Positions 3,506 to 51,181 of a stretch of DNA of 64,000 nt are shown in pieces. Within the stretch, counting starts at the first letter, position 1. Every line of letters starts with the position of its first letter. The notes beneath the pieces are model-generated. The model made no database searches. It was not told where the DNA came from and saw nothing but the letters and a program-made list of their open reading frames with translations. The stretch spans positions 124,001 to 188,000 of the IMG/VR virus record IMGVR_UViG_3300017917_002466; one strand, 5' to 3'. Both the position numbers and the translations under genes were made by a program.

Positions 3506-3790
3506 TCAAGCCCTCTTTAGATTCTTTCGGTGAGACTGTGGGTAGTTAACTCTTAACCACTTCATCCATTTAACAGAGTCAATGGTTATGGTTCCAACCA
3601 CATTTACTTCCCCGTCTTCCCTTGCAAGCTTCGCTGCGTGGTATCTGGCCGCACTTACTGAATTGAGTCCCTTCCAGTCTCGCGAGTAGACTATTAAGCT
3701 TTCAATTCCGGGATACCACTCCCACTCGCCCTTTTCAGACAAGTAGTATGGCTGGCCACTAATGCAAACATAAGGAACGTAGAACTTCAT
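3506..3790 (-). CDS. hypothetical protein
   Basis: ORF, likely start MKFYVP. Confidence 0.55.
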   Translation of the reverse strand: MKFYVPYVCISGQPYYLSEKGEWEWYPGIESLIVYSRDWKGLNSVSAARYHAAKLAREDGEVNVVGTITIDSVKWMKWLRVNYPQSHRKNLKRA

Positions 3791-4074
3791 GTTAGGCTCT
3801 TTCAATTGTGATAAGGTGGAAGCCATTAAAGACTTTGTGGTTCTTTCGGACTATGAAGGAAGCCCAATCCAACTCAATCCGCTGACCAAGGAAAGCACCG
3901 AAGTCGACTCGGCCAAAGTGAGGAAGAACAAAGGAAGTACCAGCCGAAGCCCTTGTCAGCTTCTTCTGGACGATTGAGGAGAGAATGTGATTGAGAACTT
4001 TGAACATATCGTTCCCCTTTCTGTACATCTAATATAATACAAAGGGGCCTGAATGTCAAGCCCCTTTTTGTATT

Positions 4075-4509: not shown

Positions 4510-4823
4510 TGATTGTTTTCCTTTCTGTACATTCAATATACATCAAGCGAGTCGGTTTGTCAAGCTCTATTTTTGGTATTTCCGTACAGACATAATACTT
4601 GATACTCTTCACCATCAGAGTAAGGAATCTTTTTATTTGACATTTCAGCAAAAACAAACCGAACACCTTGATTTCGAAGGTCTTGAGCAGCTGCTTGAAG
4701 GTCAGAAATTAACTCTTCTACCGAACCACCTACGCTTATTTCAACTTCTACTCTTCGCATATTCCCTCCTTTTGTACATATAATATACAACAAATGAGCT
4801 TGAAAGTCAAACTCTTTTTATAT

Positions 4824-5591
4824 TTAGTAACATCTAAGCAAGCGCTTTGTGTGCAGGGCCCCGGCGGGAAGGTGGCGTCCGTCAAGTGAATACGTCTCCA
4901 GTCGACCGGGGCGCACCGCGACCGGCGGTCTGTGGCGGCTGTCCAATACACCCGCCCTGGGCACCAGAGAAAACAATCCGGAAAGCGTACTGATACTGTG
5001 ATTGTCGTAGTTGCTCAACTGGATATAACAGGCGTCCGACTGCGGGAGATCGGTGCCCACGGTCCAGAGCCATGAACTGCCGCTGAGCCGTGCGGTCGTC
5101 AACGTCTGGAAATTGATACCGCCGTCGGTTGACAGTTCGACGCGCAGGTCGGCCTGAAGACCGATCTGCCAGGTAATCTCATACGTCGAACCCAATTCGA
5201 TATTCTCTCCGCCGGTAGGCGTCAGGACGAGAAATGGAACATCCTCCTGCACCGTTACCGATATACTGTCAACGACGGTAAACTCTCCGTCGTAGGCAGA
5301 CAACTGGAACACGTACGCTCCCGCCATCGAGAACACAACCAGAGACGACTTCGCGCCCGGAGCCCGGATATCGGCTCCGCCGGCAGGCCCGTCAACCTGC
5401 GTCCACTGATATTGCAGTTGTGCATTGAGCAGGCTGTCGTCCGTCGCAGTGGCGAAAAACCGGAAGGTCTGTCCAAGTCGAAACGTCGTATCGTGTCCGG
5501 CATTGACAACCGGCGGATTATTCTGAACGCCCCACACCCCGGACGACAGCATCAAAATACCCAGAATTGCGGAAAAACCGAGCCGAGTCAT
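4824..5591 (-). CDS. secreted PKD/Ig-like domain protein of bacterial type, possibly C-terminally truncated
   Basis: Signal peptide; NNPPVVNAGHD, YQWTQVDGP and GAYVFQLSAYDG PKD/REJ-like motifs; second Ig-like domain (PTGGE, LSTDGGINF); YSLDGR tail; GC-rich. Confidence 0.75.
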   Translation of the reverse strand: MTRLGFSAILGILMLSSGVWGVQNNPPVVNAGHDTTFRLGQTFRFFATATDDSLLNAQLQYQWTQVDGPAGGADIRAPGAKSSLVVFSMAGAYVFQLSAYDGEFTVVDSISVTVQEDVPFLVLTPTGGENIELGSTYEITWQIGLQADLRVELSTDGGINFQTLTTARLSGSSWLWTVGTDLPQSDACYIQLSNYDNHSISTLSGLFSLVPRAGVLDSRHRPPVAVRPGRLETYSLDGRHLPAGALHTKRLLRCY

Positions 5592-5621
5592 AAAACATCA
5601 CCCCCATTTAATTCACATTGC

Positions 5622-5718
5622 CTACAACGTTTACGCAATGGGCGAAGCGCACCGTCTACAAAAAAGTTTATCTTCCTCCTTACCACAAACGGTGCATTTT
5701 GCCCTTGCGCTGTTGTGT
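5622..5718 (-). repeat. attC-like site
   Basis: Minus strand ACACAAC agcgcaagggc...gcaccgt...acggtgc...gcccattgcgtaaac GTTGTAG. Confidence 0.8.
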
Positions 5719-5734
5719 GATGTGTTGCGAGTAC

Positions 5735-5881
5735 CTAAATGTTAATAGCTATTGTTGTACAAATAAACCCTGATAATAATCCAATCCCACTACCAGCAGA
5801 TGGAGGTAAATTAAAAAGAATGCTTATGCCACAACTAATGAAACATCCAATAACAAAACCAATAATCACACGACACAACAT
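5735..5881 (-). CDS. cassette-borne 48 aa membrane peptide
   Basis: AGGAGG RBS; MLCRVIIGFVIGCFISCGISILF..., two hydrophobic segments. Confidence 0.6.
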   Translation of the reverse strand: MLCRVIIGFVIGCFISCGISILFNLPPSAGSGIGLLSGFICTTIAINI

Positions 5882-5924
5882 AATACCTCCTTTAAAAATT
5901 TAAGAGCAACATTTTGCACAACGT

Positions 5925-6170
5925 TTACGCAACGGTAGATGTGTTGCGCTTACTTGGTTCACAAATATCATCTACAAACTTAAACTGACAATCGGGATAC
6001 CACTTGCACTTCAAACATTGGCGCAACATTTCTACCTTGCGGTGTTGTGTGTTGCGGAGGAAGGCTACCTCAGATTCCAGAGCAATTATGCGCTTTTGAC
6101 TACGCACACAAACCAACATTTGAAAAAAACCGATTGCCACCAAAACGATGATTGAAATTGAGTTAAGCAT
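5925..6170 (-). CDS. cassette ORF (TM, coiled coil, Cys-rich tail encoded in attC)
   Basis: AGGAG RBS; reads through attC 5917-6050. Confidence 0.65.
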   Translation of the reverse strand: MLNSISIIVLVAIGFFQMLVCVRSQKRIIALESEVAFLRNTQHRKVEMLRQCLKCKWYPDCQFKFVDDICEPSKRNTSTVA

Positions 6171-6252
6171 AATTGCTCCTATAATGATAAAAAGCCGACC
6201 GTAGTTTCACACAACGGTTTGCCGTGTGTTGTGTGATGTTTAACCGCGCCTC

Positions 6253-6399
6253 CTAATTTTCTTTCGGCGCAGGCACTTGAGTAAACTTACCATCAAGAGT
6301 AACCTCGAAATAATTACCACAACAATCCCGAACCAATTCTATATCACGATAACCGCCTACAGGCTCGTAACCAAGTTTGCGAAGAATATAGCAGTTCAT
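6253..6399 (-). CDS. cassette-borne 48 aa protein
   Basis: AAGGAG RBS; MNCYILRKLGYEP... Confidence 0.55.
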   Translation of the reverse strand: MNCYILRKLGYEPVGGYRDIELVRDCCGNYFEVTLDGKFTQVPAPKEN

Positions 6400-6455
6400 T
6401 TTTGCTCCTTGCGCCGAACTATTAATTCAAAGCGCGGTTAAATTTCGCACAACGT

Positions 6456-6761
6456 TCAGCGCACAGCCGATGCGGTACGCCCCGTGCTACGCTTCCCACG
6501 TTTCGGCTTGCGCTTGTTGGCCGATGTGCCTGCCGACTCAAATTTTACCAGCGGGCGACCCGGCGTAGTTACGAGAAGTCGAAGAAAGTAAATCGCTGCA
6601 TCGTTAGCCACTTTGTGCAGCTTTTTATAAGAATCGCGGCAGCCTTGTTGCCTGAACGTGTCAACAAAAGCCATTGCGATATTCGACTGCCACGCATATC
6701 GATACCCTTCGTCTTTTTTCAGGGCTGCCGCCACCATTTTGAATGCCTGTTGAAACTTCAT
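6456..6761 (-). CDS. cassette ORF, paralog of 33538..33795
   Basis: MKFQQAFK..AL..D.G...A.Q.NIAMA shared with 33538..33795; basic tail encoded by attC. Confidence 0.7.
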   Translation of the reverse strand: MKFQQAFKMVAAALKKDEGYRYAWQSNIAMAFVDTFRQQGCRDSYKKLHKVANDAAIYFLRLLVTTPGRPLVKFESAGTSANKRKPKRGKRSTGRTASAVR

Positions 6762-6818
6762 TTTGCTCCTTTCGCCCGCCTACAAGATGGTTCGGCAGGC
6801 ATTTTGGCCAACGTGTTG

Positions 6819-7061
6819 CTAAACGGCTGATAGTTGCCGAATAGCCTGCAAAGATTGTCGAGCCAACACATACTGACCGTTGGACGTATACTCATCGTAA
6901 TCACGCAAACGTGAGGCAATTTCAGCCTTTAGTTGTTGTAGGCTGTTTGAGGAGGCTTCCATCAATTTTGCAGCACAAACAAGTGCCGCCTCTGCACTTC
7001 CAATATCTCCAACACTTAAAGCCAATTGAGCATTATGAATGTGTGATAGTATGTGCTGCAT
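6819..7061 (-). CDS. cassette ORF
   Basis: GGAG RBS; reads through attC. Confidence 0.6.
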   Translation of the reverse strand: MQHILSHIHNAQLALSVGDIGSAEAALVCAAKLMEASSNSLQQLKAEIASRLRDYDEYTSNGQYVLARQSLQAIRQLSAV

Positions 7062-7350
7062 ATAACTCCAATGAAAAGTTTATTTCCACCAACGTTGACA
7101 AATGCTGAAGTGCCCGCCTATATAACCTCTACCTTAATGTCAGCGGGCATTTGGGTCGAGGCATCCGAGCCAGCATTTGTTTGTTGTGTGCTGTGACGAC
7201 CGGCTACCTTGATTTTCTGTGCGGCGACCTTACGCAACTTATTGGCAACGACTTCCGCAACAGGATCGGGGCCGATGACTTCGATATTCATATGATTCCT
7301 TTCGCCGCACCTATTTATAGAAAAGCCGGGCGGCATGGCATCACAACGTT

Positions 7351-7617
7351 TCAGGCACTCGCCTGTTGTTTTTCTGCGACTCTATATTGACAAGACTCTG
7401 CCACGCAATACCCACGATTGACATTTAATGGGCACTTATGTTCCGATCCGAGACAGCAGAAAAATTGCAGGCTGCCTGTGTTGTATGAAGGTTTTGTTGA
7501 CTCCACCAGTGCTGCTTTTATGCGAAGCCACGCAAGATACTGGAGTCGCGACATACCGATATCACCCCAAGCCGAATCAACACTTTCTATATCTTCTTGT
7601 AGCATAAAAGCCTCCAA
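7351..7617 (-). CDS. first cassette ORF of array 1 (start may be 7605)
   Basis: Directly follows attI-like site; Cys-rich tail encoded in attC. Confidence 0.6.
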   Translation of the reverse strand: MEAFMLQEDIESVDSAWGDIGMSRLQYLAWLRIKAALVESTKPSYNTGSLQFFCCLGSEHKCPLNVNRGYCVAESCQYRVAEKQQASA

Positions 7618-7697: not shown

Positions 7698-7726
7698 AAT
7701 ATACAACAGGAAACCGTTCTTGTCAA
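7698..7726 (-). promoter_or_regulatory. promoter facing cassette array 1 (Pc-like position)
   Basis: TTGACA-N17-TATATT immediately upstream of the attI-like site. Confidence 0.8.
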
Positions 7727-25632: not shown

Positions 25633-26481
25633 CTAACGGGCATTTCGCACAACAGTGTCCTGCGCGGGGCTTCTTAGCGCATGGATGCGCTCTTCTGCTA
25701 TCCGGCAGTATTTCTCTTCCTTCTCAATTCCGATGTAATTCCGGCCAGTATTAATACAAGCGATTGCAGTAGTACCGGAACCAATGAACGGGTCTAAAAT
25801 TGTATCACCACAAAAAGAATAATAAGAAATCGCTTTTGTAGCCAACTCTAATGGGAACGGAGCTGGATGTCTATTACGCTCCGGGTTGATTTTCCATACA
25901 TTTGTTCTTTCGTAACCATCCAGCACTTTGGATTTTTTTATTATCTCTTGTGAATGAGAACGAATTGATTTGTCCAGTAAGCACCCCGGCTTTGAAAACA
26001 CCAGTATATATTCTGTAATATTAAATGTTTTGTACGCAACTGGTCTACGATGGTGCGAAAATTTGATTGCTCGACTTGATGCACCATCTGGCTTTACCCA
26101 TATAATGTCGTCTAAGAATGTCCATTTTTTTGAAAGCATAGAACAAACATCAAACGGTATTGGTATTCGTTTTGATTCTGTGCTTCTTTTTTTCCTCGCT
26201 TCAATAACGCATGACAAGTTCAGCACAAATATTCCCGCCGGTTTTATCTTTGTATGTGCCGTATTAAAAACTGTGTCTAAAAAAGATAGATACGAGGCAT
26301 ACGATTCGTATTTTGAATAACACCTTGCATTATAATACGGCGGTGATGTTAAAATCATATCCACGCTCTCGTCTGGTATAGTCTGCATGACTTCGAGGCA
26401 GTCCCCGCATGTTACGGTATTTGTCTTCGGCGCAGGACGCGCCGTGTCTTGCCCCGCGCCTATAATTTCAGAATTTGCCAT
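25633..26481 (-). CDS. DNA methyltransferase (N4-C/N6-A, beta-type motif order), last unit of array 2
   Basis: GDCLE, ILTSPPY, HPAPFP, ILDPFIGSGTT, GIE; ATG 5 nt after GTTAGGT. Confidence 0.9.
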   Translation of the reverse strand: MANSEIIGAGQDTARPAPKTNTVTCGDCLEVMQTIPDESVDMILTSPPYYNARCYSKYESYASYLSFLDTVFNTAHTKIKPAGIFVLNLSCVIEARKKRSTESKRIPIPFDVCSMLSKKWTFLDDIIWVKPDGASSRAIKFSHHRRPVAYKTFNITEYILVFSKPGCLLDKSIRSHSQEIIKKSKVLDGYERTNVWKINPERNRHPAPFPLELATKAISYYSFCGDTILDPFIGSGTTAIACINTGRNYIGIEKEEKYCRIAEERIHALRSPAQDTVVRNAR

Positions 26482-26516
26482 ATTGCACCTAACGGTTCGG
26501 CAAACGTAAGCCGTGC

Positions 26517-26738
26517 CTACGAATGCGTGCGACAAGGATATTTTACGTGAACGCACTGACGGTCGTAATTCTCCACACAGCACGTTGTTTGGCATGGCTT
26601 GCTTTGCCTGTTGTTTGTCTGTTGAGCGAGTACAGCGGATTTCAGAGTTTGCCAATGCAACCGCCCCTTAGTTTGCAAGTGCTCCGATAACTCATCAAAC
26701 CATTGAACCGCATCAGATATTTCGTTACTCATTGGCAA
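26517..26738 (-). CDS. cassette ORF with attC-encoded Cys-rich tail
   Basis: One ORF per cassette; AGGAG RBS. Confidence 0.55.
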   Translation of the reverse strand: MPMSNEISDAVQWFDELSEHLQTKGRLHWQTLKSAVLAQQTNNRQSKPCQTTCCVENYDRQCVHVKYPCRTHS

Positions 26739-26780
26739 ACTCCTATCAGTAAATTTAAGAGCGAAATTGCAAACAACGTA

Positions 26781-27095
26781 TCACGCACCCGCCCGTTGTT
26801 TGTCCGTTATCCACTTACAGCACCGAGGGCACCAAGCATCTATACCGCTATATGGATACACTGGTGCCTTACCACATGTAGGACAAATTACGGGCTGCGT
26901 GTGTTGTGGGACCGTGGGCAATTCTACCGCAATCTCTGCGCGGCGATCTTTTACCCATTGCTCCATTTCGATTTGATCATTACTCAATACCACCAACGCA
27001 TCATTAGGGATTTTCCCACCATGACGAAAAGGTGCCGTGACCTTGTTGACTCGGCAAAGGAACATCTCAAGCCTGTGTATGTCTTCGACGCGCAT
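26781..27095 (-). CDS. cassette ORF with attC-encoded zinc ribbon
   Basis: CPTCGK...CPRC lies inside attC 26771-26909. Confidence 0.6.
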   Translation of the reverse strand: MRVEDIHRLEMFLCRVNKVTAPFRHGGKIPNDALVVLSNDQIEMEQWVKDRRAEIAVELPTVPQHTQPVICPTCGKAPVYPYSGIDAWCPRCCKWITDKQRAGA

Positions 27096-27721
27096 AATAA
27101 TTCCTTTTGAATTGCCCATGTACCACAACGTTTAGCGCACGGGTGATAGTTTGCCCGTGGCTCGACAAAGCCCACACTTTACCATACCAGTACCAGGATC
27201 GTCGGATAAATACTCGCCACTACCCATACACGTAGGGCAAATTTTACCCTGCGCTTGTTGGTTGATGCGGAGGGAAGCCACCTCAGCCTCCAGCGTGGCG
27301 ATAGCCCGTTCAAGAGACAAAAACCGATTCATAACAAATGATGGATCAGAGAAATCAATTTCGTTTACCACGCCACACCTCCATGTATAAAAAGCTGACC
27401 GAAGTTTCAACCAACGTCTGCCCTATGCTGACGTTTCTGTTTCAGAAATGTGGGAGTCATCGACCGAACAGCATTGGGCTGTTGTTTGCTGTGCGCTCGC
27501 TTCCACAAAACCTGCGGTTTGCGGAGTATCGAGAGGGCACCAATTTGGTATTTCAAAAGTAACATTGATAACAGACCTACCGCCATATAGAGGATGGTTG
27601 CAAATAAATCCACTCTGACTGTAGCACAAGGGACATTCGTTACAGCAACTAATTTTGATTACACGCATGAGCAAACCGCCTATCTATTCTCAAAAGAGCG
27701 CATTGCAACCAACGGTATCGG

Positions 27722-27958
27722 CTACGCCTGAAGTTTGCCCGTACCGTGACAACGCCAACAGTCCTTACCATTGTTATAATTATTGGTAGAACCAGACCCA
27801 GCAGGGAAACAGTCAGGGCAAATTTTAGGCTGGCCGTGTTGGTGGATGTGACGCTTGCTTCCACCAATTTTGCGGCGGGTCTTAAACTGATCCTCGCCAT
27901 AGTGGCCGGTTATGTAATTATCAAGTTCCTGACTCATGCGCTTATCGTTGCCGAACAT
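27722..27958 (-). CDS. cassette ORF with DnaJ-like Cys-rich tail
   Basis: ICPDC..GSG...CWRCHGTGK; GGAGG RBS. Confidence 0.6.
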   Translation of the reverse strand: MFGNDKRMSQELDNYITGHYGEDQFKTRRKIGGSKRHIHQHGQPKICPDCFPAGSGSTNNYNNGKDCWRCHGTGKLQA

Positions 27959-28590
27959 ATTTCCTCCCGCCGCTTACCAGTTAAAAGCAAGCGGCATTTA
28001 CACCAAGTTTGGCGCATTCGCACGAAGTTACGCCGTCTTATCGCACCAACAAGTAGAACACTGCTTGTGAGCAACATCAAACGGGCATATATCCAAGCCC
28101 CATTTACAAGAAGGCGTAATTTTGTGCTGCGCCTGTTGGTGGATGTGCCGCGTTTCTTCCGCAATGTCAGGCTGGCAATCTTCCAGCATGATAGGGCAAG
28201 AACCGGCGTGATCCACTATTTCATCTTGAGTGCCAAAGAAGCCGCAATATTTACATTTGCCAGCCATATAATAAACCTTTCTTGAAACGCGGCATTTACA
28301 CCAACGTTTGCTCAACCGCACGATAGTTGTCGCAATCGATCTACCACTGCTGTAACATAAGACACATAAACCTTGTGCTCAACAAACTCTTTGTAAAGAC
28401 TATCGGCTATTGCGGCAATTTCGTGCTTGAGCTGTTGTACGTCTGTGGAAGGAGCGGCTTCCTCAGCTTTAAGTGCTCGCATCACGGCAGGGCAACGGTC
28501 TACGTTTATACCCATACCGCTACACGGCAAAATGAATGACTTGTTATCCACGCGAGCACCTCCTAAATCGTAAAGAGCGACTGGAATTGC

Positions 28591-28722
28591 GTACAACGGT
28601 TCAGCAACGTGCGCCGTGCCTACAGGGCTTCACGGCAATATGGACACCACACAAACCCAGTATGGGCCTTGCCAAGACGAAGCCACTCGTGAAATTGGCA
28701 TGGCGTACTTGCCGTGTTGTGC
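28591..28722 (-). repeat. attC-like site, near-identical to 29438-29570
   Basis: About 105 bp internal identity with 2 visible substitutions; encodes NTASTPCQ[FY]HEWLRLGK.HTGFVWCPYCREAL. Confidence 0.85.
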
Positions 28723-28844
28723 GATGAATTTGTTGACTCCCTAATGTAAGCGCGAATTGCTTCTAACGCGGTAAAATCTTTTGAATATTTACACATTCTC
28801 TCTACTTGCAAAACGGCTTCGTGTATATCCATTCGCGCCTCCAA
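28620..28844 (-). CDS. cassette ORF (body family shared with 31415..31663)
   Basis: ALE.IRA...ESTNSSHN shared; tail shared with 29468 cassette. Confidence 0.65.
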   Translation of the reverse strand: MEARMDIHEAVLQVERMCKYSKDFTALEAIRAYIRESTNSSHNTASTPCQFHEWLRLGKAHTGFVWCPYCREAL

Positions 28845-28895
28845 TATGGTTCAACAAACTTTTGCACAACGGTTCGGCAAACGGGCGAAGTTGGT

Positions 28896-29063
28896 TTACC
28901 TCGACACGGAGGGCTGTTCTACGCCAATTTCGCCCTTTGCCTGTTGTGCGATGTTGTTTTTAATTACCTTAATTTCAGCGGCGATTTCTCGTAACCGAAG
29001 ATTATTAGCTACAACAAAGCACCACAACGATAAATAAGCCAGAAAGACAAAAAACCATTTCAT
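28896..29063 (-). CDS. cassette-borne 55 aa membrane protein
   Basis: MKWFFVFLAYLSLWCFVV... Confidence 0.55.
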   Translation of the reverse strand: MKWFFVFLAYLSLWCFVVANNLRLREIAAEIKVIKNNIAQQAKGEIGVEQPSVSR

Positions 29064-29109
29064 AATCGCCGCCTATAAATCAAAGATTAAAAACCATTTC
29101 GCCTAACGT

Positions 29110-29406
29110 CTACCGCATCGCACGAAGTTGCCGCGCCCAAACCCACAACCTACGATAAACCCCTGACGGTAGATTATTGTTATTGTCTACAAAGGCTTCC
29201 ATTTCTGCGGCAATTTTGTGCTGCGGTTGTTGCACGGGGCGCTTCGCCCGAACCGTTCGGCCCGTTTCCAAATTATCCAGCGCGGTGCGGACTGCTATTG
29301 CCCCGCTGTGGCCGAGAGAATAATTGACAACGGCAACCGCTTTGCCGTTACGACATACCTCAAACGCATAGCCAGTATCTTCTATCTCATATTTGGCACC
29401 GCGCAT
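29110..29406 (-). CDS. cassette ORF
   Basis: AGGA RBS; tail ..WARQLRA shared with 30599 cassette. Confidence 0.6.
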   Translation of the reverse strand: MRGAKYEIEDTGYAFEVCRNGKAVAVVNYSLGHSGAIAVRTALDNLETGRTVRAKRPVQQPQHKIAAEMEAFVDNNNNLPSGVYRRLWVWARQLRAMR

Positions 29407-29437
29407 ATTAACATCCTATCTTTAAGGGCCGAATGGC

Positions 29438-29570
29438 GTGCAACGTTCTCGGCAATGTACGCCGTGCCTACAGGGCTTCACGGCAATATGGACACCACAC
29501 AAACCCAGTATGGTCCTTGCCAAGACGAAGCCACTCGTGATATTGGCATGGCGTACTTGCCGTGTTAGGC
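29438..29570 (-). repeat. attC-like site, near-identical to 28591-28722
   Basis: GCCTAAC...GTTGCAC. Confidence 0.85.
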
Positions 29571-29701
29571 GATGTAGAAAGCGACTCCTTAACGTCCTCA
29601 AATTTGACAAATTCACCGTCGTCGCACTCCTCCATCCGAGCATGCGTGCCATACATATCGCTCGTGACCTTATAATCGTACCGTGTCAAATTTACATCCA
29701 T
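29468..29701 (-). CDS. cassette ORF (NLTRY...G..VKF.D.KE body family)
   Basis: Body related to 32217..32474 and 31696..31962. Confidence 0.6.
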   Translation of the reverse strand: MDVNLTRYDYKVTSDMYGTHARMEECDDGEFVKFEDVKESLSTSPNTASTPCQYHEWLRLGKDHTGFVWCPYCREAL

Positions 29702-30598
29702 ATATCGCTCTCGCTTTCTATTTCGCATAACGTCTGCCACACGGTTGATCGTTACGGCCTACCTTGCCAATCACCAGATTCACGTTCAGGAACATCATAT
29801 CGCCGTTTAGATAAATCTCCATAATATGAATAGGCCGTAATGTCAACCTGTGGCTGTTGTACGTCTGTGGAAGGAGCGGATTCTTTAGTTAATGCGGTGC
29901 AGCCATGACCGACACCCTGAACACCTTGCCACTCCCACCGAGCTTGTATATAGTGACGACAATCTTTGAACATTTGCACCGCCTTATAGATCGTTTAGAG
30001 CGACTGGAATAGCGTACAACGTGTGCCAAAGTATGAAGGTGTGAAACAATTTGCGAAGCGAACATACTTTGGCTGTTGTGTGTTGGTTTTCGCTCCACAA
30101 TATTAAAAAGCAATTTGGCGATTGTAACGAGGCCAACTCAACCACCCTCGTATCCCATCGGGCGTCCCCTTTGGTGGTCTACATAGCCGTGGACGGCTTA
30201 GCCAAATTGCCTATAAATTCAAAGAGCGAAAACTTACACACAACGTATACGCTATTGTGAAGTAACTATGTTATTTAGGCGCTCCTCTAACTGTGAAATA
30301 AGCGACAATGCCTGTGGATACGACTCCATTGCTGACGGAACTGAATCCCGTAGAAACTTGAGCGCCGCCACAATAGCGTTGTTGTGCGAAGGTTTTAACG
30401 CCTCCTCACAAAACATTTTTATGCGACCCCACGCCAGTTGTTCAGACGAAGACCCTTTTGCATTAACAAGTGCGCTAACAGATGATAGTTCATTTTCAAG
30501 CATAAAAACTCCTAAATAAAAAGCGTTAAAACTTTTGCACAACGGGATCAGGCATTGCCCGACAGTTTGCGCGGTGCTTCACAAGCGATACAAACGCT

Positions 30599-30895
30599 TC
30601 ACAAAGCGCGAAGTTGCCGCGCCCATTTACTTAACTGCTCTGCACTTGGTACGCCACCGATATTTGCTATGCGCACACCATCCTCAAGCTCAGTGGCAAT
30701 TTGGGCGATAGCCGCGCTTTGTGTGTTGGTTGATGTGGAAGGAATGCCCACCTTATTTTTCTTTCGGCGGGTAATCTTTCTCCACCACGAATGAACAACG
30801 GAACAGATAATAGCAACCAATCCTATTGCCAACGCTACGCCAAGGAACACCAGCCCAAACACATCATGAAACGTCCATACGAAAATAGAACCCAT
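30599..30895 (-). CDS. cassette ORF, membrane protein
   Basis: AGGAG RBS; long hydrophobic segment. Confidence 0.6.
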   Translation of the reverse strand: MGSIFVWTFHDVFGLVFLGVALAIGLVAIICSVVHSWWRKITRRKKNKVGIPSTSTNTQSAAIAQIATELEDGVRIANIGGVPSAEQLSKWARQLRAL

Positions 30896-30954
30896 TTTTT
30901 TCTCCTTACCCGCCGAACTATTAATTCAAAAGCGGGATTTATTTTGCACAACGG

Positions 30955-31131
30955 TCAGCGCACAGCCGATGCGGTACGCTTACCATTTTTGCTACCCCGT
31001 TTCGGCTTGCGCTTGTTGTGTGCTGTTCGGCGCGACTCTAATCGCTCCCAGGCGGCCAGCTCCGCATCACCACGGGCCTCCGCCGCACCCATCACAGCAT
31101 CAAAATCATCAGGACCATAATCGTTTTTCAT
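30955..31131 (-). CDS. cassette ORF of 58 aa; basic tail shared with 6456..6761
   Basis: HNKRKPKRGSKNGKRTASAVR vs ANKRKPKRGKRSTGRTASAVR. Confidence 0.6.
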   Translation of the reverse strand: MKNDYGPDDFDAVMGAAEARGDAELAAWERLESRRTAHNKRKPKRGSKNGKRTASAVR

Positions 31132-31414
31132 TTGGCCGCCTTTACAATAACGCTCTCACGCCGAATGGCATCACAACGTTCACCGCACGCCGGATGCGGT
31201 ACTCCGTTTACGGCTGCGGGTGTTGTGCGAAGTGCGGCCCGCTTCCGCAAGTATTGGCGCGACTTCGCTACGGTGCGCCCACTGACCTTCCTTGTCAAAC
31301 ACAAACCTTGCAATTACTTTTCCACAGCAAATCTCAGTTTTCAATGAATACCACTGCAGTTTTTTTCGCGCCATTATAACCTCCAAAAGGGCCGCATTTT
31401 GCACAACGTCTGCG

Positions 31415-31663
31415 CTACTGGTGCTGTGCGCATACTAAGCAGGCATGTTTTTTACACTTTCGACTAGTAATTACACCACAGTCGTAACCAGCTCCGATGT
31501 GCGCTTCGCATGGCACCATAGCGCTGTTGTGCGATGAATTTGTTGACTCCGCCAGTGCTGCGCGAATGGTTTCCAATGCACATTTACAATCTGGACACTG
31601 GTGTTGATCCACGACTATTTGAAAATGAGCCAAGGCTTTCTTAATTTCCATTCGCGCCTCCAA
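31415..31663 (-). CDS. cassette ORF
   Basis: 5' end near-identical to that of the 28620 cassette. Confidence 0.6.
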   Translation of the reverse strand: MEARMEIKKALAHFQIVVDQHQCPDCKCALETIRAALAESTNSSHNSAMVPCEAHIGAGYDCGVITSRKCKKHACLVCAQHQ

Positions 31664-31695
31664 TATGGTTCAGCAAATTTTTCGCACAACGTATG

Positions 31696-31962
31696 CTAAA
31701 CGGCTGATGCCTTGCGCTGGATAAAATAGTCGTGAACATCTGGATACCACACACATTTACGACATTTATATAAATCCTCGTAATCGCTACCATAGTACGT
31801 TTCACATTCCTTACAGCGCAAGGTTTCAGCCTTTAGCGGTTGGTTGCCTGTTTGTGAAAGCTCCTTAGTGTCGGCAAATTTTAAATATACTCCGTCACCA
31901 CCTTGATGTATGTCGCAATCACAATCGCAACTATTAAACACAAATGTTCTGAAATTTGCCAT
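31696..31962 (-). CDS. cassette ORF with zinc-binding tail
   Basis: AAGGAG RBS; CKEC...CRKC inside attC. Confidence 0.6.
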   Translation of the reverse strand: MANFRTFVFNSCDCDCDIHQGGDGVYLKFADTKELSQTGNQPLKAETLRCKECETYYGSDYEDLYKCRKCVWYPDVHDYFIQRKASAV

Positions 31963-32216
31963 ATAATATCGCTCCTTTCACAAATTGCAACCAACGGTTG
32001 CCAAAGTATGAAGTTTACGTTTCGTAAATTTGCGAAGCGAACATACTTTGGCTGTTGTGTGTTGGTTTTCGCTTCACAATAATGTAAGGCGCGGGGCTGC
32101 ATAGGCTGAGTAGTGACCACCGCAGCATATATCTCCACCGAAAGTACGGTGAACCCTCAATTGTCACCGCGCCATATAAATTCCAAAGAGCGAAAACTTT
32201 CACACAACGGTTCGCA

Positions 32217-32474
32217 CTACTGCTGTTCGTGCCAATCGGTTCGTTTGCCAGTAAACCTACTGCACGCATGGCACGTGGGGCTGACACAACCACCTATGTT
32301 ACGTTTGCAAGATTGGCATGACAGCATAGCGCTGTTGTGCGATGAATTTAGAAGCTCCTTAATGTCGTCAAATTTAACCCAAGCCCCCTCATCGGATGCA
32401 ACCATTTGATGAAAATTATCCATAGTTTTAGTACGGTTAAACCACTCTAAATTATAACGGGTTAAATTTGCCAT
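32217..32474 (-). CDS. cassette ORF with zinc-binding tail
   Basis: 5' UTR identical to the 31696 cassette, different attC. Confidence 0.6.
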   Translation of the reverse strand: MANLTRYNLEWFNRTKTMDNFHQMVASDEGAWVKFDDIKELLNSSHNSAMLSCQSCKRNIGGCVSPTCHACSRFTGKRTDWHEQQ

Positions 32475-32868
32475 ATAATATCGCTCCTTTCACAAATTGC
32501 AACCAACGTTTACGCAACGGGTGAAGTCGCCACAACTTTTAGATTATGACAATACCCTTGCTTTAATGTACAATGATCCGATAAACACTTTAAACTACAC
32601 TCGATTTCACCCTTGCGTTGTTGGTTGTCTGTAAAATTTTCTACCTTAGATGCAAGAGCGGCACACCATACGAGATGGGTATACTGCTCCTTATCTAACG
32701 TAGATTTACAACCAATACTATCAAACCATTCTCTACAAGTGCCGCTCATATAAACTCCAAAGAAAATTTTATTGCAACCAACGTTTGACAAATGGTGAAG
32801 TCGTGTACTCACGATTTAGGCTTTTCGTTACCATTTGTTTGTTGTAAGATGTTTATGCCACTTCCTTA

Positions 32869-33165
32869 TTATCCGTTGGCGCATCTTTGTTTTTTGATAT
32901 AGTCTAAAAGTGTAACCTGTTCTTTTTCTGGTAACTGTTCAATCACTTTTTTATTGAAAAAATATTCATCCGTAAAACCACCAACAAAATCTAACCATTT
33001 TCCTGAAATCTTTGGTAATGGTAACTCGGTGCCCCGATAAGATGCAGACATAAATATCTCTGCTGGTACGCCGTTTAATTTCCGGTAAAGTGTTCCCCCA
33101 CCACTTTTCTGATGTTCCTCTGGATACGGTGGGTTCCAAACGCCTGTGAATTTTAGTTTTTGCAT
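32869..33165 (-). CDS. cassette ORF ending before its attC
   Basis: AGGAG RBS; 98 aa. Confidence 0.65.
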   Translation of the reverse strand: MQKLKFTGVWNPPYPEEHQKSGGGTLYRKLNGVPAEIFMSASYRGTELPLPKISGKWLDFVGGFTDEYFFNKKVIEQLPEKEQVTLLDYIKKQRCANG

Positions 33166-33496
33166 TTTTTCTCCTGCGCCAACATCTGAATATCAGAGTG
33201 GCATAAATTTCTTACAACGTTCACCGCACAGCCGATGAATTGCGCTGCCAGTTACAAGAAAGATTTTTTACACATACATCACCAAACCCTGCTTGATAAC
33301 TACACATTCCACTATATGCACAAAGCAATTTTTCGGCTTGCGGTTGTTGTGGGATGTGGAGCGCAGGTTCCTTAGTGTCCTGCGCGGCACGCTTCGCCCA
33401 AAAATCAATCCATTCATCACGAGTAATAGCTGGTTTAGATGGCATAATGTGACTTTCTATGAGCCGCGCCTATCATATAGACCTGCGCGGAATTTA

Positions 33497-33560
33497 CCAC
33501 AACGTCTGCGCAACTGCGCGTAGTTGGGCCTTGACAATTACGACGCTTGCGCTGTTGGTG
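33497..33560 (-). repeat. attC-like site of first cassette of array 2
   Basis: CACCAAC agcgcaa...ttgcgcagac GTTGTGG; R'' matches the cassette start GTTGGTG. Confidence 0.85.
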
Positions 33561-33795
33561 GATGTGCCTGCCGACTCCGCTTGCTCTGCGGGCGAACCGG
33601 CGTCAACAACAGCGCGAGGAAATGATCGGCGGCGCGATTGCCTATAGTGTGCCGTTTGGCCGATGAATCACGGCTACCCTCCCAACGAGCACAGTCGTAA
33701 TACGCCATGGCGATGTTGGCCTGATAGGCACGGTACAGCCCCTTGTCGCGCCGTAACGCCCTTGTGAATACCTTGAACGCCTCTTGAAACTCCAC
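33538..33795 (-). CDS. first cassette ORF of array 2, paralog of 6456..6761
   Basis: AGGAGG RBS; GTG start. Confidence 0.7.
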   Translation of the reverse strand: MEFQEAFKVFTRALRRDKGLYRAYQANIAMAYYDCARWEGSRDSSAKRHTIGNRAADHFLALLLTPVRPQSKRSRQAHPPTAQAS

Positions 33796-43935: not shown

Positions 43936-45240
43936 CTAAATTCTGTTATCTTCAAATCGGTCTAGAAAAGTTTTAAATCCCCACATCACAGGAGGATTAG
44001 AGTTTTTTGTACTCATAAGCCACAATACTTTACATTTTGGTTGGTGGGGAGGAGAAGCACAACCATCAGTATAAACTACCAATCCATCAACCTTTTCTTT
44101 ATCAGCTAAATTCATTATTTGCTCAAAGTCAGTTCCTCCCCTACCAAGACAAGTAAAACTCTTTCTGGCTTTTCTAAAGTTCTTTTCCACAATTTTTATT
44201 TCTGTATCAAACTCCACAAAAGTTATCTTACAATAGTGAAGTAGTTTATTCACAACACCAAAACCATATGCCAAATCTTCATCAGTCATTGAACCAGAAC
44301 TATCAACAGCAAAGATAACGTGTGGCATATAAACTCGTCTATAACCTGGGAGTTCAATATCCCAACGTCTATTCAAACGCATACGGCTACTAATACTTTT
44401 TCCTGTCAATACAGAAGCGCCAAATTTTCTAATAACATCTGAAGCTCTTACTTTTGGTTCAAGAGTCGCAAGAATTGATGCCTGTGCAGTACCAGTATAT
44501 CGTCCCCATTGTCTTGTCCTATGACGAACTTTATCAACGAAAGTCTTTATATCAGTATCAAATCCATTATTCTTTCCCCAACCCTGATTGCCATTACTAT
44601 TAGGGTCAGTATATTTCGTCATTGCTTCTTTTTCATTATCAAACTCTTGGAATCCATCACCATCAGCATTTTCATCTCGTTGGTCTTGTTCATCTTCAGT
44701 TTGAGAGATTACTTTTTGAACCATATCTTTCTTTTGTTCGTCAGACATTGACCCCCAAATCTTTTGAATTTGTTTATTGACCTTATCGGCTCTTTCTAAA
44801 AGTTCTCGGAAATATTCTTCAAAAGCTAAATTATCTTTCAAACCAAATCTTTTTGGGTCGGGAGTTATTTCATCAATTCCTTGGAGAAGTTTCTCAACAT
44901 CACCGTTTGAAAGTTGATTAATTGCTAAAGAAGAAGAAAGGTGAGCGATGTTTGCCGGTTCTTTCAGTCTGGTGGTGGGGTGACGAAGAAGCACACGCAT
45001 ACCTTCCGTATAAAGTACCAATTCAAGTTTTTCAAGAGAGATTGTAGTAATAAAGTTTGGGTTATACCTAAGAGATACTCGGTCTTGTCTAGTAACATCA
45101 ATACCCATTGTGTCATATTGTGGGTCTGGAATCTTATCCAACATTGACAAAGCACCAAATAAAACATTATCTTTTCTCCAAAGAGAAAAAATAACCTTAT
45201 CTATTTTTTGTTTGGCTCTTTCTATATTTTCATTATTCAT
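43936..45240 (-). CDS. DUF2201-type protein with C-terminal VWA domain
   Basis: DSSGSM MIDAS, GRGGTDF, YTDG. Confidence 0.85.
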   Translation of the reverse strand: MNNENIERAKQKIDKVIFSLWRKDNVLFGALSMLDKIPDPQYDTMGIDVTRQDRVSLRYNPNFITTISLEKLELVLYTEGMRVLLRHPTTRLKEPANIAHLSSSLAINQLSNGDVEKLLQGIDEITPDPKRFGLKDNLAFEEYFRELLERADKVNKQIQKIWGSMSDEQKKDMVQKVISQTEDEQDQRDENADGDGFQEFDNEKEAMTKYTDPNSNGNQGWGKNNGFDTDIKTFVDKVRHRTRQWGRYTGTAQASILATLEPKVRASDVIRKFGASVLTGKSISSRMRLNRRWDIELPGYRRVYMPHVIFAVDSSGSMTDEDLAYGFGVVNKLLHYCKITFVEFDTEIKIVEKNFRKARKSFTCLGRGGTDFEQIMNLADKEKVDGLVVYTDGCASPPHQPKCKVLWLMSTKNSNPPVMWGFKTFLDRFEDNRI

Positions 45241-50301: not shown

Positions 50302-51126
50302 TTACTCCTTGTCTACATCAACCCATTTCTGAATATAGTTTCTGTCTTGTGTGAAGATAGGAATTTCAGTATCAATAACATATTCTGTTCTTATTGTAGG
50401 ATTTCCAAGTATCTGTAGTCTATCTTCTTTTGATTTAGGAAATCCATCTTTATCATCCAAGTTATATGTGAGTCCATCTTTAATACAAACACTTCTTTTA
50501 TAGACGCAAGTTCCCCTTTTCTTGTGAGTTTCTGTATCATTCCAGTTGATACCTTTCTGTGAGAAAAGCATTTCCTGAATTGCTTCACAAGACTTATGGT
50601 CAAGTTCCTTGTGAGAGAAGTGGGCTCTTCCAACCATCTGAATAGAGTTGCGAGTACAGTCCTGCTGTCTCCAAATTATCACATTAACAACATCATCTTT
50701 CGGAACGTTAAATGCTCTGGCATCAAACAAAGCTGGCTTTTTATCATATCTTTCAGGAAATTTAGCCATAAACTCGTGATTAAAGAAAGCAGTTGCCATT
50801 GAAGCCGCAACAGACTCAACTTTACTTTTACGATAGTCAAACCAAGCACAGGTTTCAATTCTTGTATAATCAGTTAAAAGTAGCGTAATTTCATCGCTTT
50901 GAGTATAACCGAACGAACAACCTTCAATATTCTTTACAAGAGCTTGAGTTGTTCTTTGCATACATTCAATAAGATTATCGTCAAAAGGTCTATTCATTCC
51001 TCTTGTTAAAGTATGAAAAGCGCACCCATCCAAACGAATAATAACTGGTACGCGTCTAGTCAAATATATTTCGGTTGCCTTTTCATATTCTTTACATCTA
51101 TCGCCTAATGATCTTTTGTCTGACAT
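50302..51126 (-). CDS. tRNA(His) guanylyltransferase Thg1-like protein
   Basis: IRLDG.AFH, YTQSDEI, FDARAF, WRQQD..RNS, GINWND. Confidence 0.9.
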   Translation of the reverse strand: MSDKRSLGDRCKEYEKATEIYLTRRVPVIIRLDGCAFHTLTRGMNRPFDDNLIECMQRTTQALVKNIEGCSFGYTQSDEITLLLTDYTRIETCAWFDYRKSKVESVAASMATAFFNHEFMAKFPERYDKKPALFDARAFNVPKDDVVNVIIWRQQDCTRNSIQMVGRAHFSHKELDHKSCEAIQEMLFSQKGINWNDTETHKKRGTCVYKRSVCIKDGLTYNLDDKDGFPKSKEDRLQILGNPTIRTEYVIDTEIPIFTQDRNYIQKWVDVDKE

Positions 51127-51181
51127 AGATACTCCTTGGTAATATAATATGGTCGCGGCTAGTTTGTCAACTAGCCACAAC

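What the first reader, a model, noticed from the sequence alone, without database searches (positions are those of the whole stretch)
4824..5628. Host-type secreted PKD protein as the terminal cassette; clue to host
Seen: the last unit of array 1 starts at a GTTGTAG junction and carries a markedly GC-rich gene with a signal peptide, PKD/Ig domains and a YSLDGR tail. It ends abruptly in AT-rich phage DNA with no attC. Inference: a bacterial cassette or chromosomal gene captured through the same recombination system. The tail resembles C-terminal sorting tails of Fibrobacterota/Bacteroidota secreted proteins, suggesting an FCB-group host whose integrase may act in trans.
Basis: inference. Interest (0 to 1): 0.6.

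Follow-up and report, generated by a model that had tools for sequence, protein, structure and literature searches.

The report
Foreign secreted PKD gene in phage
A giant T4-like pond phage carries a recently acquired, GC-rich, bacterial-type gene for a secreted two-domain Ig-like (PKD) protein; it sits between two short repeated phage motifs, which looks like ordinary modular gene shuffling rather than an integron, and it does not reveal the host.

Summary
ORF 4824-5591(-) is intact (255 aa) and has the highest GC in a 253.7-kb, 33.5%-GC phage (57.7%; GC3 0.67 vs 0.23). It encodes a Sec-type signal peptide, a K319L-type PKD domain, a second Ig/Fn3-like beta-sandwich and a 45-aa unstructured tail containing YSLDGR. 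A second assembler confirms both junctions.

The integron reading fails. The abundant repeats are sigma70 early promoters, some with stem-loops, as in the PeSL cassettes of T4-type phages. GTTGTAG belongs to a second linear junction motif (M2, about 18 copies) with no hairpin, no GTTRRRY core and no integrase in the genome.

The GC-rich DNA stops exactly at a third repeated motif (M3, CACACAACAGCGC), so the last nine codons are phage sequence. The gene occupies an M2-M3 slot like its neighbours, so capture by shared junctions is supported in that general sense.

The tail is not a detectable T9SS sorting domain, although 57% of domain-2 relatives are T9SS cargo. No donor above 48% per-domain identity exists in 1.84 billion representatives. 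Consensus TTGACA/TATATT promoters and 69% Shine-Dalgarno use argue against a Bacteroidota host. Modest interest.

The parts
4824..5591 (-). Intact CDS of 255 aa plus stop. GC 57.7%, GC3 0.67. Foreign secreted PKD/Ig-like protein.
5529..5591 (-). Residues 1-21. Sec-type signal peptide (MTR, a 17-residue hydrophobic core, VWG|VQ). No lipobox.
   Evidence: Read from the sequence. Inference; no predictor was run.
5244..5522 (-). Residues 24-116. K319L-type PKD domain.
   Evidence: 26.9 bits, E 4.8e-6. (62.8 bits to the K319L-type PKD repeat of P0069)..
4959..5234 (-). Residues 120-211. Second Ig/Fn3-like beta-sandwich with an Asp-box-like STDGG motif (Kre9_KNH / Reelin-subrepeat-B-like repeat family).
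   Evidence: AF2 pLDDT above 90. Nearest solved folds are Fn3-like modules.
4827..4958 (-). Residues 212-255. Tail with no homologues, predicted unstructured. YSLDGR at 4875-4892. Residues 247-255 (HTKRLLRCY) are coded by phage motif M3 and the DNA after it.
4842..4854 (-). M3 junction motif GCACACAAAGCGC (consensus CACACAACAGCGC). The GC-rich insert ends here.
   Evidence: 17 copies on the - strand in the two blocks and 4 elsewhere in the genome.
5617..5637 (-). Candidate non-sigma70-consensus promoter or recombination linker.
5597..5605 (-). Shine-Dalgarno-like GGGGGTGAT, 5 nt upstream of the ATG.
4782..4814 (-). Stem-loop GAGTTTGACTTTCAAGCTC (4796-4814) overlapping the -35 of a sigma70-type early promoter, TTGACT-N17-TATATT (4782-4810), for the next gene. 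PeSL-like element that closes the unit.
5631..5741 (-). Start-less relic of a small 'SHN / CxxC..CxxC' family gene (LGTRNTSHNSARAKCTVCGKEEDKLFCRRCASPIA*). It carries an M3 copy at 5707-5721 and ends in M2.
7698..7726 (-). Sigma70-type early promoter heading the roughly 2.9-kb, 8-gene block in which the PKD gene is last.

Best explanation
The window lies in the hyperplastic early region of a 253.7-kb, DTR-bounded jumbo myovirus of the T4 superfamily, recovered from a pond metagenome. ORF 4824-5591(-) is a recently acquired foreign gene, most likely bacterial. The acquired DNA brought its own start codon and signal peptide but lost its native 3' end. The GC-rich DNA begins at the ATG, about 30 nt after a repeated phage junction motif (M2, ...GCGTAAACGTTGTR..AAT). 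It stops exactly at a second repeated phage motif (M3, CACACAA(C)AGCGC). Reading then runs 9 codons into phage sequence and reaches a stop, followed by a stem-loop and an early promoter.

Neighbouring units in the same operon and in a second block (26.6-33.6 kb) have the same M2 ... M3 layout with unrelated N-terminal modules, and some are reduced to relics. The most likely mechanism is therefore recombination at short conserved regulatory or junction sequences, the same logic as PeSL-mediated modular shuffling in T4-type phages. It is not integron attC x attI recombination.

Inferred function: the gene is transcribed as the last gene of the block headed by the sigma70 promoter at 7698-7726, and perhaps also from M2. 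It is translated from its Shine-Dalgarno site and exported by Sec. It would then act as a soluble, envelope-located binding protein made of two Ig-like domains, for example by masking a surface structure (superinfection exclusion, or preventing readsorption of progeny). It may equally be a neutral recent passenger.

Shown: composition, domains, junction motifs, physical linkage, and absence of attC structure and of an integrase. Inferred: the recombination mechanism, expression, export and function.
For: Phage identity: DTR record of 253,664 bp; tail sheath, baseplate wedge and portal; portal 30% identical to T4-like gp20; pond metagenome.

Foreign origin: GC 57.7% vs 33.5%, GC3 0.67 vs 0.23 +/- 0.11. 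No PHROG, phage or IMG/VR relative. No second copy of domain 2 in the genome. 10,862 domain-level relatives, nearly all giant bacterial-type repeat proteins.

Boundaries: sharp GC drop at 4850. M3 at 4842-4854; background is 4 matches in the rest of the genome, so a chance match within +/-15 nt of the boundary has a probability of about 2e-4. M2 at 5617-5637. Map of both blocks. Relics that show deletion or replacement at the same motifs.

Physical reality: a Logan contig of the source run spans 4518 to about 7670 with 0 differences, at a depth (60) similar to flanking phage contigs (38-70).

Promoters: 78 near-perfect TTGACA-N16-18-TATATT sites against 12-29 in shuffles, of which 28 lie in window 1-16 kb on the - strand. 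Some are embedded in stem-loops.

Precedent: PeSL cassettes and mini-circles (PMC2839356, PMC4122927).

Structure: domain 2 is a confident beta-sandwich and the tail is unstructured.
Against: No related phage or donor sequence was found. The insertion event therefore cannot be reconstructed by comparison, and a native phage gene with unusual composition is not strictly excluded. Only 4-5 of 25 early promoters have a strong stem-loop, so PeSL membership is partial. The gene's 5' side is M2, not a PeSL. The function of M2 and M3 (promoter, protein-binding site, or merely conserved parts of a duplicated gene family) is untested. No RNA data exist. The second assembly uses the same reads as the first. 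The signal peptide was judged by eye.
Confidence: 0.68

Rival explanations
1. The gene is the terminal cassette of an integron-like array, captured by attC/attI site-specific recombination carried out by a host (FCB-group) integrase acting in trans.
For: Units in the block are separated by a recurring motif containing GTTGTR, which superficially resembles the GTTRRRY core. The foreign gene sits at the end of the array.
Against: M2 has no predicted consensus structure (0 pairs). The stretch between CACAAC and GTTGTAG folds no better than shuffles as ssDNA (z -0.9). Most copies have T at the fifth core position, where a purine is required. The upstream half of M2 is in-frame coding sequence of the preceding genes (...SAVR*...SPVA*). 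No PF00589 recombinase is present in the complete genome, while all 14 control genomes gave a match. The units carry SD sites, and the region is full of sigma70 promoters.
Confidence: 0.04
2. The donor is the phage's own host and belongs to the FCB group, and the protein is a T9SS cargo whose tail is a sorting signal.
For: 36 of 63 domain-2-type relatives and 8 of 86 PKD-type relatives end in T9SS type-A CTDs. Pfam finds Por_Secre_tail in 42 and CHU_C in 11 of 149 C-termini. Atlas look-alikes are small PKD + Por_Secre_tail proteins, but these are leads only, with scores of 0.82 or less. TYSLDGRHLPAG aligns weakly to the '..tldas.lasG' strand of the CTD.
Against: The tail scores -0.3 and -0.6 bits against CTD profiles. 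Pfam and NCBIfam give nothing at E up to 10, and no other frame scores better. The 35 native tail residues are too few for an 80-90-aa CTD, and AF2 predicts no structure there. The closest PKD relatives (40-48% identity) lack a CTD. Phage promoters are TTGACA/TATATT and 69% of genes have an SD, which is incompatible with Bacteroidota expression signals (PMC6847099, PMC7797042, PMC3155529). A truncated CTD could not direct T9SS export in any case.
Confidence: 0.1
3. Assembly chimera: a fragment of a GC-rich bacterial genome was mis-joined into the phage contig.
For: The sample is a metagenome, only one run holds the sequence, and the contigs break at nearby repeats.
Against: An independent assembler (Logan) gives one contig across both junctions with 0 differences and a phage-like depth. 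The insert is exactly one ORF with an SD, placed between two phage motifs. A chimera would need shared 31-mers at both ends.
Confidence: 0.03
4. A long-resident phage gene whose high GC reflects amino-acid composition or selection rather than recent transfer.
For: Other small genes of the same blocks also have raised GC (0.40-0.59). One of these, 6456-6761, has a homologue in an AT-rich phage.
Against: GC3 of 0.67 is the genome maximum and about 4 SD above the mean. The composition changes within about 40 nt, exactly at M3. No phage homologue was found.
Confidence: 0.1

Closest known systems
PeSL (promoter-early stem-loop) mobile regulatory cassettes of T4-type phage hyperplastic regions (Arbiol, Comeau, Krisch 2010, PMC2839356; Comeau 2014, PMC4122927)
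   Same: The genome is of the T4 superfamily. It has a dense array of small ORFan genes, each preceded by a near-consensus sigma70 early promoter, and some promoters are embedded in G/C stem-loops (including the one directly after the PKD gene). Content is mosaic, with indels and relics at the repeated motifs. No dedicated recombinase is present.
   Different: The PKD gene has a PeSL-like element only on its 3' side. Its actual boundaries are two other motifs: M2, which is intergenic and not of sigma70 consensus, and M3, which lies inside genes and codes 'SHN'. Only 4-5 of 25 promoters have a strong stem-loop. Neither mini-circles nor sister genomes could be examined.
Integron gene cassettes (attC / IntI)
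   Same: Tandem short units in one orientation, separated by a recurring motif, with an unrelated foreign gene at one end.
   Different: There is no attC hairpin, no GTTRRRY core, no IntI and no attI/Pc. The motif overlaps coding 3' ends, and the units have their own expression signals.
Phage morons / auxiliary genes acquired by horizontal transfer
   Same: A single compositionally deviant gene with its own translation signal, inserted between phage genes and dispensable for the core functions.
   Different: It lies in an early-gene array of a virulent-type T4-like phage, not in a prophage late region. It is C-terminally truncated at the junction.
T9SS cargo proteins of FCB bacteria (signal peptide - PKD/Ig repeats - Por_Secre_tail)
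   Same: The N-terminal signal peptide, the K319L-type PKD domain and the Asp-box Ig-like repeat are the building blocks of such proteins, and 57% of domain-2-type relatives carry a CTD.
   Different: No CTD is detectable here. The tail is short, unstructured and ends in phage-derived codons.
Ig-like domains displayed on phage virions (for example T4 Hoc; from my own knowledge of Fraser et al. 2006 and Barr et al. 2013, neither looked up here)
   Same: PKD/Ig-like folds carried by a tailed phage.
   Different: Those are fused to or assembled on structural proteins and lack signal peptides. This protein is free-standing, predicted to be exported, and lies in the early region.

Membership tests
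Integron cassette / attC | Imperfect inverted repeats (R''-L'' / L'-R') that fold into a hairpin recombination site | tested here: not met
   RNAalifold predicts 0 pairs on 18 aligned M2 copies. ssDNA fold of 5605-5735 gives z -0.9, and 39 of 200 shuffles fold as well.
Integron cassette / attC | R' core GTTRRRY at the cassette boundary | tested here: not met
   The copies read GTTG[T/G][G/T/A]. The fifth base is T in most copies, including GTTGTAG.
Integron cassette / attC | IntI tyrosine recombinase with attI and Pc next to the array | tested here: not met
   PF00589 gives no match in the complete 253.7-kb genome, while all 14 control genomes gave a match. An enzyme acting in trans cannot be tested.
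PeSL cassette (T4-type HPR) | T4-type phage genome with hyperplastic regions of small ORFans | tested here: met
   Sheath, baseplate wedge and portal families. Portal 30% identical to T4-like gp20. ORFan content.
PeSL cassette (T4-type HPR) | Repeated sigma70-consensus early promoters preceding the ORFans | tested here: met
   78 sites against 12-29 in shuffles, of which 28 lie in window 1-16 kb on the - strand, 20-45 nt upstream of SD + ATG.
PeSL cassette (T4-type HPR) | Stable stem-loop adjoining each promoter | tested here: inconclusive
   4 of 25 have z below -2 (at 3509, 4059, 11944, 14712). The one after the PKD gene (4810) has an 8-bp stem, -9.1 kcal/mol, z -1.7.
PeSL cassette (T4-type HPR) | The mobile gene is flanked by PeSLs on both sides | tested here: not met
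   The 3' side is a PeSL-like element (4782-4814). The 5' side is M2 (5617-5637), and there is no sigma70 promoter between 4810 and 7726.
PeSL cassette (T4-type HPR) | Indels between sister phages, or mini-circles, with crossovers in the motif | not testable with these tools
   No related genome in IMG/VR or the phage collection. Only one run holds the sequence.
T9SS cargo (type A CTD) | C-terminal 80-100-aa sorting domain (PF18962 / TIGR04183) | tested here: not met
   No hit in Pfam or NCBIfam at E up to 10. -0.3 and -0.6 bits against CTD profiles built from relatives. No CTD in other frames. AF2 gives the tail pLDDT 52-72 and no strands.
T9SS cargo (type A CTD) | N-terminal Sec signal peptide | tested here: inconclusive
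   The sequence fits the n/h/c-region pattern and the -3/-1 rule (VWG|V). No predictor was available.
PKD domain (K319L-like, PF22352) | Match to the family profile at or above the gathering score | tested here: inconclusive
   26.9 bits against a cut-off of 27, E 4.8e-6, full profile 1-84 covered. Supported by 56-63-bit pairwise matches to repeats of proteins that Pfam scores at 130-336 bits.

The most novel reading that the evidence does not exclude
M2 (...GTTGCGYWRACGTTGKG..AAAT) and M3 (CACACAACAGCGC, whose core is the reverse complement of the GTTGTG in M2) may together form a previously undescribed, recombinase-independent module-swapping system in a T4-superfamily jumbo phage. In this reading, the N-terminal half of a multicopy small zinc-ribbon gene family serves as a landing slot. 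Unrelated genes, up to a bacterial secreted-protein gene, would be exchanged into that slot and placed under a phage-specific (middle-type) promoter.
Probability: 0.2. Interest if true: 0.6.

Novelty: new variant of a known kind. Interest (0 to 1): 0.36.

Why it matters
The locus shows at base-pair resolution how a virulent-type jumbo phage takes up a bacterial gene. The insert is bounded on both sides by short conserved phage motifs, and its reading frame is closed by phage sequence. If M2 and M3 prove to be functional exchange points, they would extend the PeSL concept of regulatory sequences that also act as recombination handles to new motif types, one of which lies inside genes. The case also shows the limits of host inference from a single gene: composition and domain type point to one lineage, while the phage's own expression signals point elsewhere. 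The gene product itself is an ordinary Ig-like binding module of unknown ligand.

Tried and rejected
1. Word-index protein searches with the whole protein and with residues 117-255 found only the protein itself. The length window limits these searches, so the exhaustive HMMER search was used as well. It found no relative above 43% by its own figure (48% per domain in the MAFFT alignment), and nothing matched the tail.
2. tblastn against 50,697 phage records gave no match. IMG/VR and GTDB genome scans gave only a 34% PKD match in a Verrucomicrobia MAG.
3. An IMG/VR pattern scan for M2 gave 71 single, chance-like hits and no arrays.
4. IMG/VR scans with the 101-aa neighbour and with the SHN family gave one unrelated AT-rich phage homologue and nothing else.
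5. Single-sequence AF2 of the whole protein was useless, with pLDDT 33. A mixed two-domain MSA stacked domain 2 onto domain 1 and was discarded. Domain 2 plus the tail was folded separately.
6. The first ad hoc CTD profile was contaminated by PKD segments and was rebuilt from PNPF-containing seeds.
7. A PF22352 search of the phage's own genome failed to find even the known copy, so it says nothing about other PKD genes.
8. The AsiA search was uninformative because none of the control genomes gave a match.
9. GC difference was rejected as an argument against host origin. From my own knowledge, T4-like phages can be 15 or more GC points below their hosts.
10. No alternative genetic code was used.
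11. Two early searches failed for technical reasons and were repeated.
Full report
**Context.** The window is bases 124,001-188,000 of a 253,664-bp IMG/VR virus record with direct terminal repeats. Genome GC is 33.5%. The genome encodes a contractile tail sheath, a baseplate wedge, a portal, an SbcC-like nuclease, RNR and an NAD-dependent ligase. Its portal is about 30% identical to gp20 of T4-like phages. A 140-aa open frame with a Sigma70_r2-like match, probably a gp55-type late factor, is also present. The phage is therefore a distant jumbo myovirus of the T4 superfamily. The only public run that holds the sequence is a pond metagenome.

**The observation.** ORF 4824-5591(-) is an uninterrupted 255-codon frame.
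- Its GC is 57.7%, against a gene mean of 34.5 +/- 7.0%. This is the highest of all ORFs of 100 aa or more.
- GC3 is 0.67, against 0.23 +/- 0.11 for 133 long genes. This is the genome maximum.
- The N-terminus (MTR, a 17-residue hydrophobic stretch, VWG|VQ) has the form of a Sec signal peptide and has no lipobox. This was judged from the sequence.
- Residues 24-116 match the K319L-like PKD profile over its full length. The score is 26.9 bits against a cut-off of 27 (E 4.8e-6). Pairwise matches to PKD repeats reach 56-63 bits in proteins that Pfam scores very strongly.
- Residues 120-211 belong to a second repeat family (Kre9_KNH / Reelin-subrepeat-B-like, with an Asp-box-like STDGG motif).
- With a 61-row alignment, AF2 folds this second domain as a confident beta-sandwich (pLDDT above 90). 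Residues 212-255 have pLDDT 52-72 and no secondary structure. The nearest solved folds are generic Fn3/Ig modules.
- YSLDGR is residues 234-239.
- GC falls from 0.70 to 0.25 within about 40 nt at the stop codon.

**Is it real?** Logan's independent assembly of the source run yields one contig covering 4518 to about 7670 with no differences. Its depth is 60, comparable to neighbouring phage contigs (38-70). That contig breaks only at the repeated promoters. A chimera is very unlikely, although the reads are the same as those of the original assembly.

**What the 'array' is.**
- The commonest repeat of the region is (G)GGCTTGACAAA-N17-(TG)TATATT on the - strand, followed by 20-45 nt, a strong SD and the ATG. 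There are 78 near-perfect sites in the genome against 12-29 in shuffles, and 28 of them lie in window 1-16 kb. These are sigma70-type early promoters.
- Some promoters are embedded in G/C stem-loops, for example AAAGGGGCTTGACATTCAGGCCCCTTT at 4041-4067. The element right after the PKD stop codon is another (GAGTTTGACTTTCAAGCTC, 4796-4814). Only 4-5 of 25 have a clearly stable stem.
- This matches, in part, the PeSL 'mobile regulatory cassettes' described for hyperplastic regions of T4-type phages. In those phages, recombination between the motifs moves ORFans and produces mini-circles without any dedicated recombinase (PMC2839356, PMC4122927).

**The GTTGTAG junction (M2).**
- GTTGTAG alone is not enriched (8 hits vs 5.7 expected). 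It is part of TGCGTAAACGTTGTAGGCAAT (5617-5637).
- That sequence is one of about 18 copies of a longer motif, M2..CAAC.ATC.sC.GT..GCG.t.A-ACGTTGkG-..AAAT.
- All copies are on the - strand, in two GC-richer blocks (5.6-7.4 kb and 26.7-33.5 kb). The ACGTTG core occurs 21 times there against 0.68 expected (P 3e-24).
- M2 lies 37-75 nt upstream of start codons. Its upstream half is the in-frame 3' end of the preceding gene (...TSPVA*...LSPVR*...SAVR*...LSAV*).
- M2 has no conserved secondary structure (0 pairs). The stretch upstream of the PKD gene folds no better than shuffles as ssDNA (z -0.9).
- The core does not fit GTTRRRY, and the complete genome has no tyrosine recombinase although all 14 control genomes gave a match.
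- M2 is therefore not an attC. It could be a second class of promoter: a TGn-extended weak -10 (..AAAT) with a conserved upstream box would resemble the layout of T4 middle promoters. This was not tested.

- The GC-rich DNA ends at GCACACAAAGCGC (4842-4854). This is a copy of a third repeat, M3, with consensus CACACAACAGCGC.
- M3 has 17 copies on the - strand in the same two blocks and only 4 elsewhere in the genome. A chance match within +/-15 nt of the compositional boundary has a probability of about 2e-4.
- In intact members of a small ORFan family, M3 encodes the hinge '..S(S/T)HN(S/T)A..' between a variable N-terminal half and a Cys-rich C-terminal half.
- In the PKD gene, M3 is read in another frame. 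Residues 247-255 (HTKRLLRCY) and the stop codon therefore come from phage sequence, and the native C-terminus of the foreign protein is missing.

**The same layout in the neighbours.**
- The 143-nt 'intergenic' stretch upstream of the PKD gene is a start-less relic of a family member (LGTRNTSHNSARAKCTVCGKEEDKLFCRRCASPIA*).
- The 48-aa genes at 5735-5881 and 6253-6399 each lie between an M2 and an M3 relic.
- The 101-aa gene 6456-6761 carries a fused M3-type tail (...TSANKRKPKRGKRSTGRTASAVR*) that its homologue in another phage lacks.

The PKD gene thus occupies an M2...M3 slot like its neighbours, and the slot is closed by the PeSL-like element at 4782-4814. This supports the general idea of capture at shared junctions. 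The likely mechanism is recombination at short repeats, as in PeSL shuffling, rather than site-specific integration.

**Origin of the gene.**
- No relative of comparable length exists in the 5.8-billion-protein index, in phage records, in IMG/VR or in GTDB representative genomes, where the only hit is a 34% PKD match in a Verrucomicrobia MAG.
- The exhaustive HMMER search of 1.84 billion cluster representatives gives 10,862 hits. All are domain-level matches to giant repeat proteins, at most 43% identical by the search's figure and at most 48% per domain. None covers residues 217-255.
- Only one of the 149 relatives (P0129) has a single match spanning PKD into domain 2 (query residues 23-199).
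- The donor lineage is therefore unsampled.
- Of the 149 best relatives, Pfam finds Por_Secre_tail in 42 C-termini and CHU_C in 11. Split by type, 36 of 63 domain-2-type relatives and 8 of 86 PKD-type relatives carry a type-A CTD.
- A donor from a T9SS-bearing (FCB) lineage is thus plausible. The closest PKD matches lack a CTD, and one of them carries a cohesin domain.

**The tail.**
- Pfam and NCBIfam report no sorting domain, even at E up to 10.
- phmmer of the tail against the 149 C-termini gives E above 1.
- CTD profiles built from the relatives score the tail at -0.3 and -0.6 bits. The only alignment is TYSLDGRHLPAG to '..tldas.lasG'. Other reading frames score worse.
- About 35 native residues cannot form an 80-90-aa CTD.
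- The resemblance is a possible remnant at best. It is not a functional sorting signal.

**Host.**
- The phage relies on near-consensus TTGACA/TATATT promoters.
- 69% of 302 ORFs have a GGAG/GAGG/AGGA site at a start, against 6% at internal control positions.
- Bacteroidota use -33/-7 TTTG/TANNTTTG promoters. They do not express E. coli-type promoters, and their mRNAs lack SD sequences (PMC6847099, PMC7797042, PMC3155529). A Bacteroidota host is therefore unlikely.
- Nothing can be said about other FCB phyla.
- GC content does not settle whether the donor is the host. From my own knowledge, T4-like phages can be far more AT-rich than their hosts.

**Function (inference).** The gene has an SD (GGGGGTGAT, 5597-5605). 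It is the last gene of a block headed by the early promoter at 7698-7726, with M2 directly upstream. If made, the protein would be exported and act as a soluble or envelope-associated binding module. A role in masking a surface structure is a reasonable guess, for example in superinfection exclusion or in avoiding readsorption. A neutral, recently acquired passenger is about equally likely, given the unameliorated composition and the truncated end.

**Verdict.** The feature is an ordinary kind of event, gene gain in a T4-type hyperplastic region, with unusually clear breakpoints. The surrounding M2/M3 architecture is the more interesting and still unexplained part.

Noticed in passing
window 5600-7400 and 26600-33600, - strand: Two GC-richer blocks (gene GC 0.33-0.59) are built from alternating motifs: M2 (ACGTTGkG core, about 18 copies) and M3 (CACACAACAGCGC, 17 copies). 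Each block is headed by one sigma70 promoter (7726 and 34130). The core of M3 is the reverse complement of the GTTGTG in M2. The function of both motifs is unknown.
   Followed up: partly
window 6228-6271 and 6410-6453: 44-nt inverted repeats (73% complementary) flank the 48-aa ORF 6253-6399. They consist of an M2 copy and an M3 relic, plus an extra shared TTTAACCGCGC. This is the only unit with such long terminal inverted repeats.
   Followed up: partly
window 7351-7617, 28620-28844, 29468-29740, 30252-30542, 31415-31663, 32217-32474 (-): A multicopy ORFan family of 74-96-aa proteins (some coordinates are longest-ORF starts). The N-terminal half is variable, the hinge is conserved (ESTNSSHN(S/T)A) and the C-terminal half is Cys-rich. 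No PHROG match (three members tested) and no IMG/VR relative.
   Followed up: partly
window 6456-6761 and 33538-33795 (-): Paralogous small proteins (...Y.YAWQSNIAMAF...). The second copy has 58.9% GC. A homologue with 63% identity over 51 aa lies in an AT-rich phage contig (L074:8001-8156) and lacks the basic ...KRKPKRG...TASAVR tail.
   Followed up: partly
window 27132-27410 (-): The 92-aa protein has a weak match to the zinc-ribbon region of Q-like antitermination proteins (phrog_6060, E 8.5e-6).
   Followed up: no
window 50302-52108, 56323-57489, 25633-26655, 43936-45240 (-): A Thg1-like tRNA-His guanylyltransferase lies next to a nucleotidyltransferase. The window also holds a NAMPT-like protein, a DNA methyltransferase and a 434-aa HNH endonuclease. 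No tRNA genes were found in the window.
   Followed up: no
L078:12726-16226 (G000:72726-76229, +): The ribonucleotide reductase large subunit is 1167 aa, and its family matches split into residues 26-264 and 666-1166. This suggests an insertion of roughly 400 aa, possibly an intein or homing element.
   Followed up: no
L086 (G000:51153-51287, +): A 140-aa open frame has a sub-threshold Sigma70_r2 match (20.5 bits). It is probably the gp55-type late sigma factor.
   Followed up: no
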